From the NCBI RefSeq assembly GCF_963853765.1, contig NC_088857.1, positions 36,518,001-36,582,000 of the forward strand: a stretch of 64,000 nucleotides of DNA, in the 5' to 3' direction. Below are positions 55,253 through 63,900 of this stretch, piece after piece (position 1 is the first letter of the stretch; each line of letters opens with the position of its first letter). Source of the stretch: Magallana gigas (Eukaryota). A program made the position numbers and the translations under genes. The notes beneath the pieces are model-generated. The model saw only the letters and a list, made by a program, of their open reading frames with translations. It was not told the origin of the DNA and did not search any database.

Positions 55253-58200
55253 TTATTTCGATGAATGCATCGCTGCTTCTTGGTGCATATGCTAAAAAAG
55301 ATAAAAAAAAAATCATGTTACATCATAGGCGTTTTGGAATTTGTGAGTTAAATTTTAATACTGAACTTTATATTGATATTATATAATTTTTGAAAATTGC
55401 CAAGCACTTGACACGTAAACATTGTCTCTCAATTTGATATAAAAAAAATCCATACATCAATTTTTTTTGTCTTTACTTTGATTAAGCTAGTAAAACGAGA
55501 TGACATTTTTTTAAAATTTTAAGTGTGACCATGAATATTTTAAACGGTTATTAAAAAACTTCTCTCTGCTTTTTAGTACAAGTACACGTAGCCAACAAAA
55601 ACACTGAAGTATACTCACCTCGACCAAGTAGGAGATGAACAAATGTGTATCGGACTGGGTACTTATGTCTGTAAAGTGATTAGAATACTTATATTGTCAC
55701 ACAATACTGCTGATAATATAGAACTGGAGTATCTAGTAACCACGTGTTAAAGTTGGAGTACATGTAATTAACGTAACGCTCGAACCGTGATTTCGTACCA
55801 CTCGCCATCATGTAAAAAAAATCCTTGTCCTATACATATTTTAGATTCATTCCTAACGCCCATGATAATACTTATTTTTGTTCACTTACGAAAGGATAGA
55901 AACCACTTGCTGTGGTTAGTTATCTCACAGTCTCAAATTAAAATGATTCACTTTNNNNNNNNNNNNNNNNNNNNNNNNNNNNNNNNNNNNNNNNNNNNNN
56001 NNNNNNNNNNNNNNNNNNNNNNNNNNNNNNNNNNNNNNNNNNNNNNNNNNNNNNNNNNNNNNNNNNNNNNNNNNNNNNNNNNNNNNNNNNNNNNNNNNNN
56101 NNNNNNNNNNNNNNNNNNNNNNNNNNNNNNNNNNNNNNNNNNNNNNNNNNNNNNNNNNNNNNNNNNNNNNNNNNNNNNNNNNNNNNNNNNNNNNNNNNNN
56201 NNNNNNNNNNNNNNNNNNNNNNNNNNNNNNNNNNNNNNNNNNNNNNNNNNNNNNNNNNNNNNNNNNNNNNNNNNNNNNNNNNNNNNNNNNNNNNNNNNNN
56301 NNNNNNNNNNNNNNNNNNNNNNNNNNNNNNNNNNNNNNNNNNNNNNNNNNNNNNNNNNNNNNNNNNNNNNNNNGCTGGATGATCTTGGCGTACCCCTCTC
56401 GGTGGATGATGGGGGTCAGGGTGTGGGACTGAGCAGCGCGGAGGAGTTCATCTAACAGAGCCTGCTCGTCCGCGGAAAGGGCTTGTACGGCCGGATTCTG
56501 GTGTACCTTATTGAGGAAATCTGTAAGACTCCTCTGTAATAATAGAAAGTATGTATCCGGGAAAAAAATCACACGGAGAGTTAAATATTTGGTGAGGGTG
56601 TTAATTCGGTGTTGGTTTGAATCTTTACCTGTATATGAAGCGTTTACCAAATCACTTGTACTAGTATTAATATGTGATAGTAATTTCTTTCAATATTGAA
56701 GGTATGATATATTTCATTCTAGTGAGTGTTAGCGATTTCAATACAATACTAGGTCATCATTTGATAATGATTGTCTGCTCTATTCTGGTTGGTAGGTCAT
56801 CGTTATTCTACCATTTTTTGTGCGTAAGAGCTGATAATTTCAAACTCTTCTAATAATGAGACAAAAAATATCTTACATCTACATTATTACGAAAAAAACT
56901 CTGTAAATCGCAGAACCAAACTGAGTTTGCTACATTTTTGTCAGCCGTTCGAGACGAGACAAACAGATTTAATTTCAAAGATAACCTAAATTTCAAGAGC
57001 AATATAATGCACGATTTTTCAAAACAGTTTTTGCAAGACATTCTTAGGTCAATATGAGACCCAGGCAATTGCAAATAGGTTGGTATCTTTGATAATAACA
57101 CATAACGATTGCCGTGCCGGTTTTGGTTACAATTCTTATCTAATGGCCAAAATAAGCGAGAAAAAAAAACGTTCATCTGGCAAGATTTTAAATGTATTTT
57201 TGATTGATGAAGGCGAGCATTTAAAATGACATGCAACTTAAAAATTATTTGAAGATGATTGACAATTTTTAAATGAATAATATATTGTAAATAATGGTTT
57301 TTTTTCTCCAAAACATGCAACTCAATTTGCACAGATATCTTTCATGCATAAATTGATAGTTTGTGTGTTAATGTACAATTTGATAAAACAATTAACATAT
57401 GTCAGTTAATGAAAAGAATTACCTTTCTTCCAATTGCTGATTGGCCAGAGCCATCTGGATTTTCTTGGTTCAGCTCCTAATAGAGAAGAAAAGACACTTA
57501 TATTCGCTTCTTGTGTTTCTTAATTACATTATATGAGATACTGTACTCTGTCCAGAGTTTTTGCTTCCACCACTTTTTGCTTGATATTTTGATAATCATC
57601 AATACCTTTGTGCTCAAACTACGTTCATCCACTAATATGAAAAATGCCCAGATAATCTGTTTCGAAACGCCCCCTCTACCGCATCATGTTTCAATACACA
57701 TCCAAAAATAGAAAGTCTACGGCGATTTTGCATTGAATCAGCCATTAATAAGCCCGGATGATAACGTTGAAAAATTGCGCGAGGTATCCCGAGTACTTCC
57801 GAATGGAGAAACGATGTAAACATTTCCCATTATAAATCTCCGGAGAAATTTGTTTTCGTTCCTGGGAACTTTTATGAGTGAAAAATGATAATTGTTCAAT
57901 GAAGATAATTGGATATATTCCCTTTCATCGATTTCAACTGTATTTCTTTCACAGGTATATATTTACATCCCCCAAGTTTTATTCCTTCTATTTCTTACGG
58001 AAACTTAAAGTTCATTCATAGCTCTATAGAAACAGCCAGACTGAAATCTACACTCCCCGTTTATCGATTGGTCGAAATCTACAGCGGCTGAAACTGACAA
58101 AAAAATGACAGGACAGATATTGACACGCCCTGTTTATCGATTGGTCCAAACCTACAGCGACCTAGGAAAAATCACGGACTGCACGAAATAATCATGACGA

Positions 58201-60315
58201 TGTCAGACTCAAAGTCTCACAGGAGAAGATTTGGCTGTTTCTTTTAGTTATCGTACTTACGTACATTAACAGTAATTTAGTAAATTTTACTTACTTTTCA
58301 TAATCAATTTATCAATTAGCTAAAAGAAAGATGTTAATATAAAGAATAAAATGCTTTCTTTGATGATTCATTCGGATTATGAAGATAGCGATCATTGCAG
58401 AAAAAATTTACATAACCCGCTAACGCAGGTTATGTATTTTTTCTGCAATATCGCTACATGTACCCTCATATCCCGAATGTATCACCAAAGAGAGCATATT
58501 ATTGTTTAAGTGTATTTTTATTAAAAATCATCAAAACGTGATGGAAGCAATAACTTGGGACAGACTATATGTTTTTTATTCTTTTACATCCCATCGAAAA
58601 TTTAAATCTACACTGTGCTACCAAGAGTTCGTGCCGAAATCATACGAACTCTGCAACAGTAGCATGCGTGGATATAAAAAAGGAATGTTCAAAACATGAG
58701 GAAGCGTCCTAAGTTTACGTAGCCCCCCCCCCCCTTCTTAAAAAAAATTAGTCATATGTAGAAAATTAAGGACCCATCCCTCCCTCTTTCTGGAAAAAAA
58801 CACAATTCATTTTTTAAAAGAATTTTTCTACTCGACACTCATTACTCATTTTACAATAATTAGGACATACCTGAATCATGTACTGTTCAAGCCTGTGCGC
58901 CTCTGTGGCATTAATCTTTGTAATGGCTGGAAAGACAGAATTCATACGATTATAACCGCAATGCAGATTTCTATGATACAACACAACCCATCACCTCCAT
59001 AAATAAAATCGTAAAGGAAATATTGGTTGCCAAGGTGAGAATAGCCCATTTCCTTCTAAATCTTAGAATTGTACAATTGCATGGAAATAAATTCGATTGG
59101 CCATGAAAAAAAAATTATCTCACACATAGCAACAAAATCGAGTTGATAATTGAATTCAATCACACGCCCTAATGTATAATATATGTACATTTACCCCTAT
59201 CGATCCCAAATAATAAAATATATATTCTTCAGAAAAATATTTTCTGTATGTATTCATAGGACACGACACTCTAGGAGTAAGAATTAAACAATCTTGAATC
59301 TACTTTACCTAAGGAAATAAGCGAAGGAATTTTGATAATACATTTTATTTTGGTTTTAGTTTAGAAGCTTTTTATCACATACCAACCTATTTCCATTATT
59401 TGACAATTAACCCACTTCACCCAATTCCTTCATTAAACAAGAGGCCCAGGGGCCACATCGCTCACTTGAGCAACAATTGCCTTAATTCTGATCAAATTAG
59501 CATTACAGTATCAAAATATCTTGACAACTAAGTACAGTAGATCTTGCTAAAAAAAAAAATGAAAATCTGCCAATTTTTATCCACCTCTTTCTTTTGGTAA
59601 ATACCAATCCCCTTTTGTTGTTGTACCTGTAAGATGATTTTTCTCTTTTCCTATATACCCCCCCCCCCCATTTTGTTGCCCCACTTTTCTCTAGGGTATC
59701 ATGGTTTCATCAAACTTATATCTACATAACTAACCTGTGCTTTCACACTAAGTACTGAGTTTTGGACCGAAAAACTTTCCCTGAATATTTTTAAAGATTT
59801 TCTCTATATATGTAAAAATTCAAACCGCCATCACGGCCCCGCCCTACCATTAGGGACTGTGATTTTGAATTTACACTACCCGAGGATGCCTCTACACAAG
59901 TTAAAGGTTTTCTGGCCAAATGGTCTTTAAAAAGAAGATTTTTTAAGATTTTCTCTATATATTCCTATGTAAAAATTGATCCCCCAATTGTGGCCCCACC
60001 CTACCCCAAGGTATCATGATTTGAACAAACTTGAATCTACACTACCTGAGGATGCTTCCATTCAAATTTGAGCTTTCCTGGCCTAATAGTTTTTGAGAAG
60101 AAGATTTTTAAAGATTTTTCTCTATATATTCCTATGTAAAACTTAATCCCCTTCTTGTGGCCCCTCCCTACCCCCAGGGACCAAACTTGAATCTACACTA
60201 CCTGAGGATGCCTCCACACAAGTTTTAGCTTTTCAGGCCAAATAGTTTTTGAGAAGAAGATTTTTGAAAAATAACAACAAATTTTCAATAATTCTCAATT
60301 ATCTCCCCTTTAAAC

Positions 60316-60358
<43 letters not shown>

Positions 60359-60407
60359 TAGTGGTGCTTTGTGCCAAATTTGGTTGAAATCTGCCCAGTG
60401 GTTCTTG

Positions 60408-60448
<41 letters not shown>

Positions 60449-60477
60449 GACGACAACGACAACGACAGACAACGGAC

Positions 60478-60509
<32 letters not shown>

Positions 60510-60900
60510 TGGCTCAGGTGAGCTAAAAAGCTGATCAAGATAGCTCACTTGAGTTTAGAGCTCAGGTTAATTTAAAAAAAAGGACAGCTTAATGCCCATA
60601 AAAGGTACGTAGCAGTATATTACCATCTACCAAAAGTAGGAACTTGTCGAAGCCAACGGTGTCAATGTAGTGGGTTACAGCATCTACTTCCGCGGCAGCA
60701 AGTAGTTCCACCAGCATGAGTTTGTGAGTGGTCGGGAGTTGGTGGAAGGTGTCTGAATGGTGCATGCCCTGTAGAACAATCAGCAGATGGTCCTGTCCGA
60801 TTGGCTGGGTGTGGTGAGGTGGCGTGGTCACTGCAACATTTTGGACCGAGGGTACTAGTACCGCGACCAAGAGGCAGCACAGGATATGTTGAAATTCCAT
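55253..60900 (-). CDS. Uncharacterised secreted protein with two ~75-aa His-containing helical repeats separated by GRKR
   Basis: Exons (minus) 60900-60624, 58926-58871, 57476-57423, 56533-(runs into the N gap at 56373), 55668-55619, 55291-55253 (TAA). Hydrophobic signal peptide MEFQHILCCLLVAVLVPSVQN. Intron phases 1,0,0 then 1,0 recur with the repeat. Confidence 0.8.
55955..56373. other. Assembly gap (419 N)
   Basis: Run of n characters; it hides the end of exon 4 of the two-repeat gene. Confidence 0.99.
57544..58569. mobile_element. Second copy of the 37667-38136 MITE, carrying a ~550-bp nested insertion
   Basis: Colinear with copy 1 up to ...TTTCACAGGTAT (~57958); homology resumes at GTGTATTTTTATTAAAAATCATC (~58509). 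Same TIRs. Confidence 0.8.
59435..60529 (+). mobile_element. Helentron/HINE (pearl/CvA-like) non-autonomous element carrying a Cg170-like satellite array
   Basis: T|AAACAAGAGGCCCAGGGGCCACATCGCTCACTTGAG start; central tandem monomers; (GAC/GACA)n microsatellite at ~60435-60475; 3' palindrome GCTCACTTGAGCCTTTGGCTCAGGTGAGC followed by an A-run. Confidence 0.88.
59640..60420 (+). repeat. ~166-bp satellite monomers (Cg170-like), about 4-5 diverged copies
   Basis: Anchor GATTTTCTCTATATA recurs at 59796, 59947 and 60113 (spacing 151, 166); AAACTTGAATCTACACTACCTGAGGATGC recurs. Confidence 0.85.
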
Positions 60901-63900
60901 TTTTTTTAAATCAACACTCTGTAAAAGAATGCTTAAAGCAAATCAATTAGTCTACATTTTTACTAGATTTGCAGGTGAAAATCGACGATTTTTTAAATGT
61001 TAAGGTAAAATAAAACACATTTACAACACATTACCTGACATTCATTGCACATATTTAATATTTTCAAGCTGCATAAATTCATAATAGAACGAAGGACATA
61101 CGTACCTATGGGAACAGAGGCCACAATATGTTTAGGAATGGAGTTACTTATTCACGACTTATGACATGGATATCGAGTCCTTATCTTATCTCAACATGAA
61201 CATTGTTTAATTCTTCAGTTTACATGTACTATTCCATCGTGTATCATTTAGCTTCAACGCTACGAAACTTTCTGACATAGGCTTAGTAATACGTCTACAT
61301 CCAGTGGGTTGTTTTTTTTTCGATTCATCCCGCGCTTTGTGTTTTCGGAAGTTTAAATTATGAATACACTGTACCAACAGTAATCATCAGTAATATATAA
61401 GTTATGTATGTATAAAATTTCAAGAAGAATAAATTTAAAATTGTGATTTAATTAATGTACTCGCTATCCTCTATGGGGGGAAATAGCATGGTTAAAACGT
61501 TGTTCAAAATTTATATTCTGCAGTTAATTATCATAGAAAATATTGACAAAACGAAAATTTTGTAAGCTTTTGGAAATTGTATTGAATTGAAACCGCATTT
61601 TCAATCCCCTTACAGTATTAGGGCTGTTATCAAATTAGAACTTTTCATATGATGACGAAATACTAGTACACACTGATCCCATTAGGTTCCCTACATGTAT
61701 GTGTTTCTACAGATGGCGTGTACAGGCGATGCATAAAATTAAAAAGTCAAAAGCGTGAATGATAAATAAATAAATGATTTCTTTCCTTTCTTAGACTGAA
61801 AAGAAATAACATGAACTACTTCATTAATTATACTACTTTTGTAAGTCTGTTTCTTTTTTTCTTTTTTTCCAGTCTTTTTTTTTCCAGTTTAACTTCTAGA
61901 CATAATCTTTTTTCTGTTGATAGCAAACAATCAGTTATAGAAATGTAACTTACCTATTTTACAAAGTGATACGGAGTACCCCAAAATGACTGTATTATTG
62001 GAATAATTTGATATTTTTAATAACCGATTTAGTGATGTCTTTCTTTTTATTATCAAGATCATACCAGGGGTGAAAAATTGGACCAAAATTCAGAACACCT
62101 TATCATGCAATTCAACTTTGTATGGGAAATTGGCATTTCTTTGGCGAATTTTTAGCAATGGTGTAACTTAACACAGAGAGATTTGGTGGGAGAAAAAACT
62201 GCCTTACGTCCAAATTTTATTTCACCAAATTATTCTGAATGAGACTTGAAGCTACAATGACGTCATATCGTGATTATGATGTAAAGAAGTTATATGTAAA
62301 GATGTGAGCTATTCAATGTGGTTTTCTGACTTTGTCTCCAAATCAAAAAACATCTGCATGAAGTTTAAGGGTGTTATTTTTTTGGATAATGGTCCCTTTA
62401 CTCTATGTCTTGCAATTATGCTAAAGAAATCATGGAACGAGTAAGACGGTGTGTAATAGGAGACCGCTAGGGTTAGCTAACAAGGGTCACTTAGTCTGTG
62501 TTGGGCTGGTTCTGTCTTGTATTTGAAATTCTCAGATAACCCACGGCTTTTAGTTTAGGAAAAAAAAATCATGCATGTCGTACCAAATATTAGGTTTGAC
62601 ATACAATGTGCGATTGTGCTGCAAAAAATCATAGTCTCTCTCCACCCTTTTATGTGCAAATTTAGATATAAGATATCATATTTTTTTTAATGCAAGGCAT
62701 GATATAAGATATCAAAAACCGGTTTAACTGTTCAAGTACAACAGATGACATTTAAAACACTCTATGGATTCATATTTAGGATTGGGAAGAATGAATTTGA
62801 ATAACAAAACACATAAATGTAGACACAATGAACACCTCAAGGCTTTGGTTGGAGAAAGATGTGATGATTAATTATAGCATTGAATGATATGTTTTTGATG
62901 CTGTCGGGTCAATAACTGCCGTCAGGTGATAATTTGTCTGCTCACCTGACCGCAGTTATTTACATTCCGACGTCAAAAATAAATCATTTAATGTTTATAT
63001 TTACATTCCCTTACTGATGAAATTAATTATTTACTTAAATAAATCGATACAAATTGCAGATCACGGAGGGAGTACATCAGTAACAGCAAGAACAGCTGTT
63101 TTATAAAAATCGGCTTAAACTGGTTATCACATAGCCTGTTTAGTTGAGATCGATGAACATGAAAATATAATCCATGAAAATAAACTCTTGAAACTTTGCT
63201 TTTCACAATAAGATCAACTTTTTTGTTGAATAATTGTAAAACATATGGTGCTTTGACAACATGTATGAAATGTATTTTTTTAACCGATAACACAGAAATC
63301 ACTGTTTGGGAACTACTTATGTAAATTACATGTAAATTCATACGCAGTGATTGGTTGTTGCATTGAGGGGTATTCAAAGATCACAAAATTTAATGGAAAA
63401 ACACAGTAGAATGTAAATATAAATTCATATCTTAAAGCACATGGGTGTTGTTACATAGACCTAAGCATTAGTCTCGGAAAAAATCCTTATCAGATCACTA
63501 GCAGTAATTATGTAAAAGTTGTTGTTAATTTGAGACGAGTTTCTTAATTTTCCGATTTAAAGATGGCGGCGTACTTGAATGCTACATCATGGATATTTGG
63601 GACCAGATTGTTCAAAGGGACACTTCGCATTGTTCTTACATACGACATTTTATAAGTACCAAAACACAATAAAGCTTAGGAAAACCCAAGAGGTGTTTTG
63701 TAATTGTTTGTTGTTGTATATTAAGGATGACGTTTACTCAGAATGAAAAAAAATTCCACTGATAATAATGAAAAACCAACTATTGTGTGTTATAGACCTT
63801 ACATGGTAGTGTTATTCTTCACTTTCAGAAAAGTAGGTCAATGACCTACTTTTTGAGTTAATGGCCATGGAGTATATTTTGAAAATTGAAGAAAAATCCA

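What the first reader, a model, noticed from the sequence alone, without database searches (positions are those of the whole stretch)
55253..60900. Unrecognised secreted protein built from a duplicated three-exon, His-containing helical module
Seen: repeat 1 LLIVLQGMHHSDTFHQLPTTHKLMLVELLAAAEVDAVTHYIDTVGFDKF...TEAHRLEQYMIQ|ELNQE aligns with repeat 2 LTDFLNKVHQNPAVQALSADEQALLDELLRAAQSHTLTPIIHREGYAKI...SDTHLFISYLVE|HMHQE. Conserved H, ELL-AA, G(F/Y)-K, H-x4-Y and QE, with matching intron positions and phases. The visible mature chain has no Cys, is His-rich and has one NAT sequon. I cannot assign it to any family. Inference: a lineage-specific secreted metal- or lipid-binding, shell-matrix or haemolymph protein.
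Basis: partly seen in the sequence, partly recalled or inferred. Interest (0 to 1): 0.74.

Follow-up and report, generated by a model that had tools for sequence, protein, structure and literature searches.

The report
Secreted two-module protein, unstudied mollusc family
This is a real, expressed oyster gene for a secreted protein made of two copies of a small six-helix module joined by a basic cleavage-type site; it belongs to a family conserved in bivalves and snails that has no name, no Pfam model and no recognisable fold, so what it does is unknown.

Summary
Spliced transcript contigs from two studies join all six coding exons. They cross the N gap with only nine further letters and keep the frame and intron phase (214 codons).

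The two halves share 27% identity and BLASTP misses the match. They are nevertheless homologous:
- Smith-Waterman scored 50 against 24.9±4.5 for shuffles.
- A profile built only from first modules of other species hits the second half at 70.6 bits.
- Intron positions and phases match.

Modules are separated by KR/RR sites (here GRKR, conserved in oysters). Module N-termini sit directly after the signal peptide or after a basic site.

Best reading: a secreted precursor cut by convertases into acidic, His-rich, Cys-free helical binding modules. The ligand (metal or lipid) is untested. A neuroendocrine large-peptide role is the main rival. Interest is moderate.

The parts
61106..61117 (-). 3' end of a non-coding 5' exon; its upstream limit is not known
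   Evidence: Ten loose letters of transcript contig X1 beyond 60920 (table 7) match the window only at 61108-61117. They are followed by AG|GTACGT. The implied intron 61105-60919 has GT..AG ends.
60624..60918 (-). Exon 1. It holds the 5'UTR (60918-60901), the ATG at 60900, the signal peptide (about 60900-60841), an N-terminal extension with PPHH, and helices 1-5 of module 1. It ends in phase 1.
   Evidence: Translation; splice borders; contigs reach 60916-60920 and join 60624 to 58926 in four runs.
58871..58926 (-). Exon 2 (56 nt): start of the last helix of module 1, with the NAT sequon at 58912-58904
   Evidence: The N-x-T sequon before E-A-H recurs in oyster, ark-shell, unionid and scallop homologues.
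57423..57476 (-). Exon 3 (54 nt): end of module 1 (ELNQE) and the linker. The G-R-K of the GRKR site is at 57431-57423.
   Evidence: The linker and GR(K/R)R are conserved in Crassostrea virginica, Saccostrea (two species) and Ostrea.
56374..56533 (-). Visible part of exon 4. It holds the last Arg of GRKR (56533-56531) and helices 1-5 of module 2. The exon runs 9 nt further into the N gap.
   Evidence: joint 55670/56374 with 7 letters between.
55955..56373 (.). Assembly gap (419 N). It hides the last 9 nt of exon 4, its donor site and part of intron 4.
   Evidence: The gap was not filled.
55619..55668 (-). Exon 5 (50 nt): start of the last helix of module 2. It is the counterpart of exon 2 and two codons shorter.
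55217..55291 (-). Exon 6: end of module 2 (HMHQE), the C-terminal tail, stop TAA at 55255-55253, an AATAAA overlapping the stop, and a 3'UTR reaching at least 55217
   Evidence: X4 contig reaches 55217.

Best explanation
This is an expressed gene for a 214-residue secretory precursor belonging to an unnamed family restricted to bivalves and gastropods.

After the signal peptide and a short extension come two homologous modules of about 80 residues. Each is predicted to fold as a compact bundle of six helices and contains no cysteine. The modules arose by an old tandem duplication of a three-exon unit.

They are joined by a disordered linker ending in GRKR. I infer that a subtilisin-like proprotein convertase cuts there in the secretory pathway. 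That would release two separate acidic, His-rich, N-glycosylated proteins of about 9-12 kDa, the first possibly ending in an amidated Ile. I further infer, more weakly, that the free modules act as soluble extracellular binding or carrier proteins. The candidate ligands are divalent metal ions on His/Asp/Glu surfaces, or a small hydrophobic ligand.

Shown: gene structure, splicing, expression, homology of the two halves, family membership, and enrichment of basic sites between modules.

Inferred: secretion, cleavage, amidation and ligand binding.
For: Gene and transcript. All splice borders are canonical. Spliced contigs from runs of four studies carry its junctions: all five in X1 and X4, four in X5 (all but the gap joint) and three in X10.

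Homology of the halves: plus matching intron positions and phases.

Family:
- The profile search gave 75 representatives at E<=1e-3 and 25 at E<=1e-10.
- Named members come from Saccostrea, Crassostrea virginica, Ostrea, Mytilus, Mizuhopecten, Ylistrum, Pinctada, Tegillarca, Mya, Potamilus, Haliotis, Gigantopelta, Batillaria, Littorina and Plakobranchus.
- Identity is 76% to C. virginica, 68-71% to Saccostrea and Ostrea, and about 40% to mussel and scallop.
- Two paralogous genes lie in the same genome.

Fold. Each module has six helices at pLDDT about 85-95. The linker is below 60 and whole-chain pTM is only 0.48, so there is no confident packing of module on module. The single-module model has pLDDT 87 and pTM 0.74.

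Processing:
- [KR]R dipeptides occur at 3.8% per residue in inter-module linkers and 0.1% inside modules. Counting sites that the profile absorbed, 18 of 23 distinct linkers have one.
- In single-module members the D-L-L start follows the signal peptide directly. In later modules it follows KR, RR or R directly.
- Gly precedes the basic residues in all five oyster orthologues, in Mya, in Pinctada and in the own-genome paralogue.

Composition: 8.4% His, no Cys, pI 5.8.

Age of the duplication. First modules and second modules of oyster, scallop and mussel orthologues form separate supported clades (97/91 and 95/89).
Against: - No protein-level data exist. Cleavage, glycosylation and amidation are read from motifs only.
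- P4 of the site is Gly, so it is not the strict furin motif R-x-K/R-R.
- Mytilus orthologues have only a single Arg (K-L-R or Q-A-R) at that place.
- No His column is invariant (at most 21 of 37 modules), which weakens the idea of a fixed metal site.
- The conserved positions are mostly core hydrophobics, so they say little about a ligand.
- The structure was predicted for the Saccostrea orthologue (69% identical), not for the window's own protein.
- The tissue of expression is unknown because run metadata are coded.
Confidence: 0.5

Rival explanations
1. It is a neuroendocrine or endocrine prohormone. The precursor passes through the regulated secretory pathway. PC1/3- or PC2-type convertases cut at GRKR, carboxypeptidase trims the basic residues, and the exposed Gly is converted to a C-terminal amide. 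The modules of about 80 residues would then be large helical signalling ligands acting on receptors.
For: The signal peptide, tribasic site and preceding Gly form the classical prohormone signature, and it is conserved in all five oyster orthologues. Several family members end in Gly or Gly-Lys: scallop, mussel, Mya, Haliotis, C. virginica and a relative of the single-module paralogue. That is roughly 7 of 27 complete C-termini. Module N-termini lie exactly at the predicted cleavage points.
Against: The amidation signal is not conserved even among orthologues: the window protein ends SSK, Saccostrea ends STT and C. virginica ends HG. The gene family shows lineage expansions, with several clustered Haliotis genes, and one-, two- and three-module forms; both are more typical of effector or carrier families than of hormones. 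Transcript contig depth reaches hundreds in some libraries. There is no evidence of neural expression. No such precursor turned up in the literature searches.
Confidence: 0.17
2. It is a lipid or hydrophobic-ligand carrier polyprotein of the gut or body fluid. It would work like the nematode polyprotein allergens (ABA-1) or cockroach Bla g 1, though unrelated to them: tandem Cys-free helical units released from a precursor, each enclosing a lipid.
For: The architecture is the same: tandem helical units, no Cys, basic cleavage sites between units. A Littorina family member appears in the transcriptome of Digyalum oweni in the same 90% cluster as a Littorina saxatilis protein. Digyalum is a parasite of the Littorina gut epithelium (PMC6733595). 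This looks like host carry-over from gut tissue.
Against: An 80-residue six-helix module is small for an enclosed lipid cavity. No fold or sequence match to ABA-1, FAR proteins or Bla g 1 appeared in any search. The two modules are not predicted to pack into a capsule (pTM 0.48). The gut hint concerns a distant gastropod paralogue and is indirect.
Confidence: 0.15
3. It is an unprocessed two-domain secreted protein, for example a shell-matrix, mucus or haemolymph component. On this reading the basic motif is only a linker feature and the His-rich acidic surface interacts with mineral or metal.
For: The protein is acidic and His-rich, has an N-glycan sequon and no Cys. The paralogue on chromosome 4 and its Pinctada fucata orthologue carry a Thr-rich mucin-like linker and a His-rich tail, features seen in matrix and mucus proteins.
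Against: The strong, family-wide enrichment of KR/RR exactly at module borders and the existence of free single-module genes argue for separable units. The one shell-proteome supplement checked did not contain the Pinctada sequence. The protein is globular and helical rather than low-complexity.
Confidence: 0.13

Closest known systems
Uncharacterised mollusc proteins of the same family (e.g. Saccostrea echinata XP_061181506.1, Crassostrea virginica LOC111111173, Ostrea edulis LOC125648315, Mizuhopecten yessoensis XP_021353037.1, Mytilus edulis XP_071122944.1)
   Same: These are orthologues with the same length (207-218 aa) and two-module layout. They share the sequon and the basic site between modules. 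Identity is 68-76% in oysters and about 40% in mussel and scallop.
   Different: Nothing of substance. None has a described function, so the match names the family but explains nothing.
Nematode polyprotein allergens/antigens (ABA-1 type lipid-binding polyproteins)
   Same: Both are secreted precursors of tandem, helical, Cys-poor units separated by basic convertase-type sites. This is a working analogy.
   Different: No sequence or fold similarity was detected. The units here are about 80 residues rather than about 130, with 1-3 units rather than 10 or more. The taxon differs, and lipid binding is untested.
Insect Bla g 1 / Ins_allergen_rp repeat proteins (PF06757)
   Same: Both are secreted, Cys-free, all-helical tandem repeats of six helices per unit, with possible gut expression.
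   Different: There is no Pfam hit at E<=10 and no structural hit. In Bla g 1 two repeats form one capsule; here the modules are not predicted to pack together.
Classical neuropeptide / prohormone precursors
   Same: Both have a signal peptide, dibasic or tribasic cleavage sites, and Gly before the basic residues as an amidation signal.
   Different: The conserved units are folded 80-residue domains rather than short peptides. The short linker peptides are not conserved outside oysters.
Pfam DUF4476 (PF14771), the name UniRef gives one Mytilus galloprovincialis member
   Same: Only the automatic label on UniRef100_A0A8B6GV93.
   Different: The current Pfam model matches neither that protein nor any other member at E<=10. 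In this genome it matches nothing at the window's locus.

Membership tests
Unnamed mollusc six-helix module family (this report) | Significant match of each half to the module profile | tested here: met
   The window's modules score 102.8 and 70.6 bits against an HMM built from other species' first or single modules. In the genome search they give E 7e-24 and 9e-24, but there the profile includes both modules themselves.
Unnamed mollusc six-helix module family (this report) | N-terminal signal peptide, Cys-free mature chain, module start D/S-h-L directly after the leader or a basic site | tested here: met
   The signal peptide was judged by eye from n-, h- and c-regions; no predictor was available.
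Unnamed mollusc six-helix module family (this report) | Module split by a phase-1 intron 10 residues after the conserved Gly and a phase-0 intron after Y-x-x-Q/E | tested here: met
   Both modules of the window gene. The first exon of both chromosome-4 paralogues ends at the same place.
Pfam DUF4476 (PF14771) | HMM match above the gathering score | tested here: not met
   No hit at E<=10 for six members, including the one so named. No hit at this locus in the whole-genome scan.
Nematode polyprotein allergen (ABA-1/NPA) | Sequence or fold similarity to ABA-1 units | tested here: not met
Nematode polyprotein allergen (ABA-1/NPA) | Tandem units separated by basic cleavage sites | tested here: met
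   This is an analogy of architecture only.
Nematode polyprotein allergen (ABA-1/NPA) | Binding of fatty acids or retinoids | not testable with these tools
   Needs recombinant protein and ligand assays.
Insect allergen repeat (Bla g 1, PF06757) | Pfam match or shared fold | tested here: not met
   no Pfam hit; not among structural matches.
Neuropeptide / prohormone precursor | Signal peptide plus dibasic sites with an amidation Gly | tested here: met
   GRKR spans 57431-57423 and 56533-56531 and is conserved in oysters.
Neuropeptide / prohormone precursor | Conserved short bioactive peptide between cleavage sites | tested here: not met
   Conservation lies in the 80-residue modules. The linkers differ freely between orders.
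Neuropeptide / prohormone precursor | Expression in neurons or endocrine cells | not testable with these tools
   Run metadata are coded.
Shell matrix proteins | Detection in a shell proteome | tested here: inconclusive
   The only supplement checked (Pinctada fucata, PMC4660305) holds no sequence of the Pinctada family member. Other proteomes were not searched.

The most novel reading that the evidence does not exclude
The modules are a new fold class of convertase-released, partly amidated protein ligands of about 9-12 kDa. They would be either a mollusc-wide family of large helical hormones or cytokine-like signals, or a new type of metal or lipid shuttle. The family would date back to the bivalve-gastropod ancestor and has been overlooked until now.
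Probability: 0.15. Interest if true: 0.75.

Novelty: new variant of a known kind. Interest (0 to 1): 0.45.

Why it matters
Molluscs have many conserved secreted proteins without any assigned function. This family spans bivalves and gastropods and is well expressed. Its module is confidently predicted yet matches no solved or catalogued fold, and it carries a clear, testable processing signature. Defining the module (79 profile positions, six helices) would give Pfam-style annotation to dozens of "uncharacterized" gene models in oysters, mussels, scallops, abalone and other molluscs. If the modules prove to be hormones or metal or lipid carriers, that would bear on oyster physiology: metal handling, digestion and endocrine control. 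If they are only another lineage-specific secreted protein, the value is mainly in annotation.

Tried and rejected
- BLASTP of half 1 against half 2 gave no alignment at E<=100. Shuffle statistics and profiles showed this reflects low sensitivity, not absence of homology.
- Pfam on exon translations and on 16 full-length members gave only sub-threshold noise such as MgtE_N, Abp2 and SRP1_TIP1.
- DUF4476 was rejected. The lophotrochin paper that mentions it (PMC7441323) concerns another protein.
- PDB sequence profiles gave nothing below E 0.006, only designed armadillo repeats and serpins.
- Foldseek against PDB gave nothing.
- Foldseek against AFDB clusters gave only the family's own scallop member A0A210Q1A7.
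- The ESM Atlas, searched by structure and by features, gave nothing.
- Literature searches for peptide words and for 24 accession or LOC identifiers of family members found no paper.
- The Pinctada shell-proteome supplement gave no match.
- Sample look-ups for two transcript contigs gave one SRA run and one JGI metatranscriptome, neither informative about tissue.
- Earlier scan notes contained nothing relevant.
- Proteins P0014 and P0094 may come from other copies of this species' gene. I did not use them to read the gap.


Full report
**The sequence and the gap**

The window is AT-rich eukaryotic DNA (GC 0.29-0.37). It comes from a 564-Mb genome in which this scan has notes on 10 sequence pieces, at C5:36.52-36.58 Mb. 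Its closest relatives are oyster sequences.

Every border that can be read is AG|exon|GT.

The N run is 55955-56373. It begins directly after the last visible letter of exon 4.

**Transcripts**

Twenty public runs hold exon 1. Contigs of four of them, from four studies, were laid on 55150-60950.

- Two contigs, X1 record 1 (672 nt) and X4 record 9 (699 nt), carry all six coding exons joined at exactly the predicted borders. The skipped stretches end CT..AC on the plus strand, which is GT..AG on the coding strand.
- X5 and X10 support the junctions in part.
- Across the gap the contigs go from 56374 to 55670 with seven letters that lie on neither side. The two letters 55670-55669 coincide with the intron's last AG. 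Exon 4 therefore continues for nine letters and ends in phase 1.
- The coding sequence is 277+56+54+169+50+39 = 645 nt, or 214 codons plus stop. The Crassostrea virginica orthologue has the same length.

I did not fill the N run. In scripts the four affected residues were X.

The runs are only guessed to be RNA, but intron-less contigs show cDNA.

A loose end of ten letters beyond 60920 matches only 61108-61117, next to AG|GTACGT. So there is a further 5' non-coding exon, spliced to 60918. AATAAA overlaps the stop codon, and one contig ends 36 nt downstream, at 55217.

**The internal repeat**

BLASTP sees nothing between the halves. Three other lines show that they are homologous.

- Smith-Waterman with BLOSUM62 scores 50 against 24.9±4.5 for 2000 shuffles, none of which reach it. 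With the small exons added it scores 64 against 28.7±5.3.
- An HMM built only from first or single modules of other species scores the window's second half at 70.6 bits and the first at 102.8.
- The two introns inside each module sit at identical alignment positions with identical phases (1, then 0).

In a maximum-likelihood tree of 37 modules, the first modules of the oyster, pearl-oyster, scallop and mussel orthologues form one supported clade (97/91). Their second modules form another (95/89). The duplication is therefore much older than oysters, which explains the 27% identity.

**The family**

The same genome has two more genes on chromosome 4, placed head to head about 4 kb apart.

- One has two modules, a Thr-rich linker and G-R-R before module 2.
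- The other has a single module.

A profile of five modules was searched against 1.84 billion cluster representatives. It found 75 proteins at E<=1e-3 and 25 at E<=1e-10.

- Five long repetitive proteins among the hits match only 17-30 profile positions, and I regard them as spurious.
- Every hit that carries a name is molluscan and "uncharacterized": bivalves of seven orders and gastropods of four major groups.
- The one apparent exception is labelled Digyalum oweni. It shares a 90% cluster with a Littorina saxatilis protein, and Digyalum lives on the Littorina gut epithelium (PMC6733595). It is therefore host carry-over.
- Members have one, two or three modules.
- Identity of the window protein to its orthologues is 76% (C. 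virginica), 68-71% (Saccostrea, Ostrea) and about 40% (Mytilus, Mizuhopecten, Mya).

**No known relatives**

- Pfam gave nothing above noise.
- The label DUF4476, which UniRef attaches to one mussel member, is not reproduced by the current model, either on the proteins or on this genome at this locus.
- PDB sequence profiles were negative.
- AlphaFold2 on the Saccostrea orthologue, with a 22-sequence alignment, gives two six-helix modules at pLDDT about 85-95. The linker around GRKR is poorly ordered and pTM is 0.48, so no packing between modules is predicted.
- A single module with a 37-module alignment gives pLDDT 87 and pTM 0.74.
- Foldseek against PDB found nothing below E=2.
- Foldseek against AFDB clusters found only another scallop member of the family.
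- The ESM Atlas gave nothing.
- No paper in the held library mentions any of 24 identifiers or peptide words of the family.

**What the anatomy suggests**

The module consensus is dominated by core hydrophobics, one nearly invariant Gly, several acidic positions and four semi-conserved His columns (17-21 of 37 modules).

Family modules are 6.7% His, 14.5% Asp+Glu, 6.6% Lys+Arg and 0.17% Cys. The window's mature chain is 8.4% His with pI 5.8.

The most telling feature lies between the modules.

- [KR]R dipeptides occur at 3.8% per residue in linkers and at 0.1% inside modules.
- Counting sites that the profile's first two columns absorbed, 18 of 23 distinct linkers have one. Three more (Mytilus) have a single Arg directly before the module start.
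- In single-module genes the D-L-L start follows the signal peptide directly. In later modules it follows the basic site directly. In the chromosome-4 paralogue even the first module is preceded by K-R.
- In oysters the site is G-R-(K/R)-R, with the whole linker conserved. Gly before the basic residues, and C-terminal Gly or Gly-Lys in about a quarter of complete members, look like amidation signals. They are not conserved between orthologues.

**Verdict**

The best-supported mechanism is a secreted precursor cut at the inter-module basic site into two small acidic His-rich helical proteins. I take these to be extracellular binding modules with an unknown ligand (confidence about 0.5 for the whole chain of inference). 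Gene, expression, duplication and family stand at about 0.95 or higher. Processing stands at about 0.6.

The rivals are a neuroendocrine large-peptide precursor, a lipid-carrier polyprotein analogous to nematode ABA-1 or cockroach Bla g 1, and an unprocessed matrix- or mucus-type protein. Tissue expression and protein-level mass spectrometry would separate them.

In architecture it is a new variant of a known kind (a secreted tandem-module precursor). The module itself belongs to no described family or recognisable fold.

Noticed in passing
G000:C4:12234233-12235960 (minus) and 12239985-12241275 (plus); loci L008, L007, L002, L003: Two paralogues of the window gene lie head to head about 4 kb apart on another chromosome. 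One has two modules, a Thr-rich mucin-like exon, KR before module 1 and GRR before module 2; a (ATCT)n microsatellite lies in its intron. The other has a single module ending in a His/Gly-rich tail.
   Followed up: partly
window 59418-60581 and 57478-58641 (introns 1 and 2 of the gene): The intronic stretches are covered by many short contigs at depths of hundreds to about 15,000 and carry many variant letters. They therefore look like copies of dispersed repeats transcribed elsewhere. 59865-60265 is a 156-bp unit repeated 2.5 times (81% matches), and 60438-60479 is an (ACGACA)n run.
   Followed up: partly
window 56404: In run X5, three contigs (depth 196 of 893) lack one letter in the GGGG run of exon 4, which would shift the frame. 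Loose ends sit at the same place. This may be a homopolymer assembly error or a rare allele.
   Followed up: no
window 60900-60907: The A-run just upstream of the ATG is one letter shorter in the X1 and X4 transcript contigs than in the genome. This is a length polymorphism or error in the 5'UTR and has no effect on the protein.
   Followed up: no
P0044 / P0087: A protein filed in EukProt under the gut parasite Digyalum oweni is in the same 90% cluster as a Littorina saxatilis protein. It is host contamination of that parasite transcriptome.
   Followed up: partly
window 44121-52087: Earlier scan notes place a head-to-head pair of SRSF7-like genes with poison exons just downstream of this gene. 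I did not examine them.
   Followed up: no
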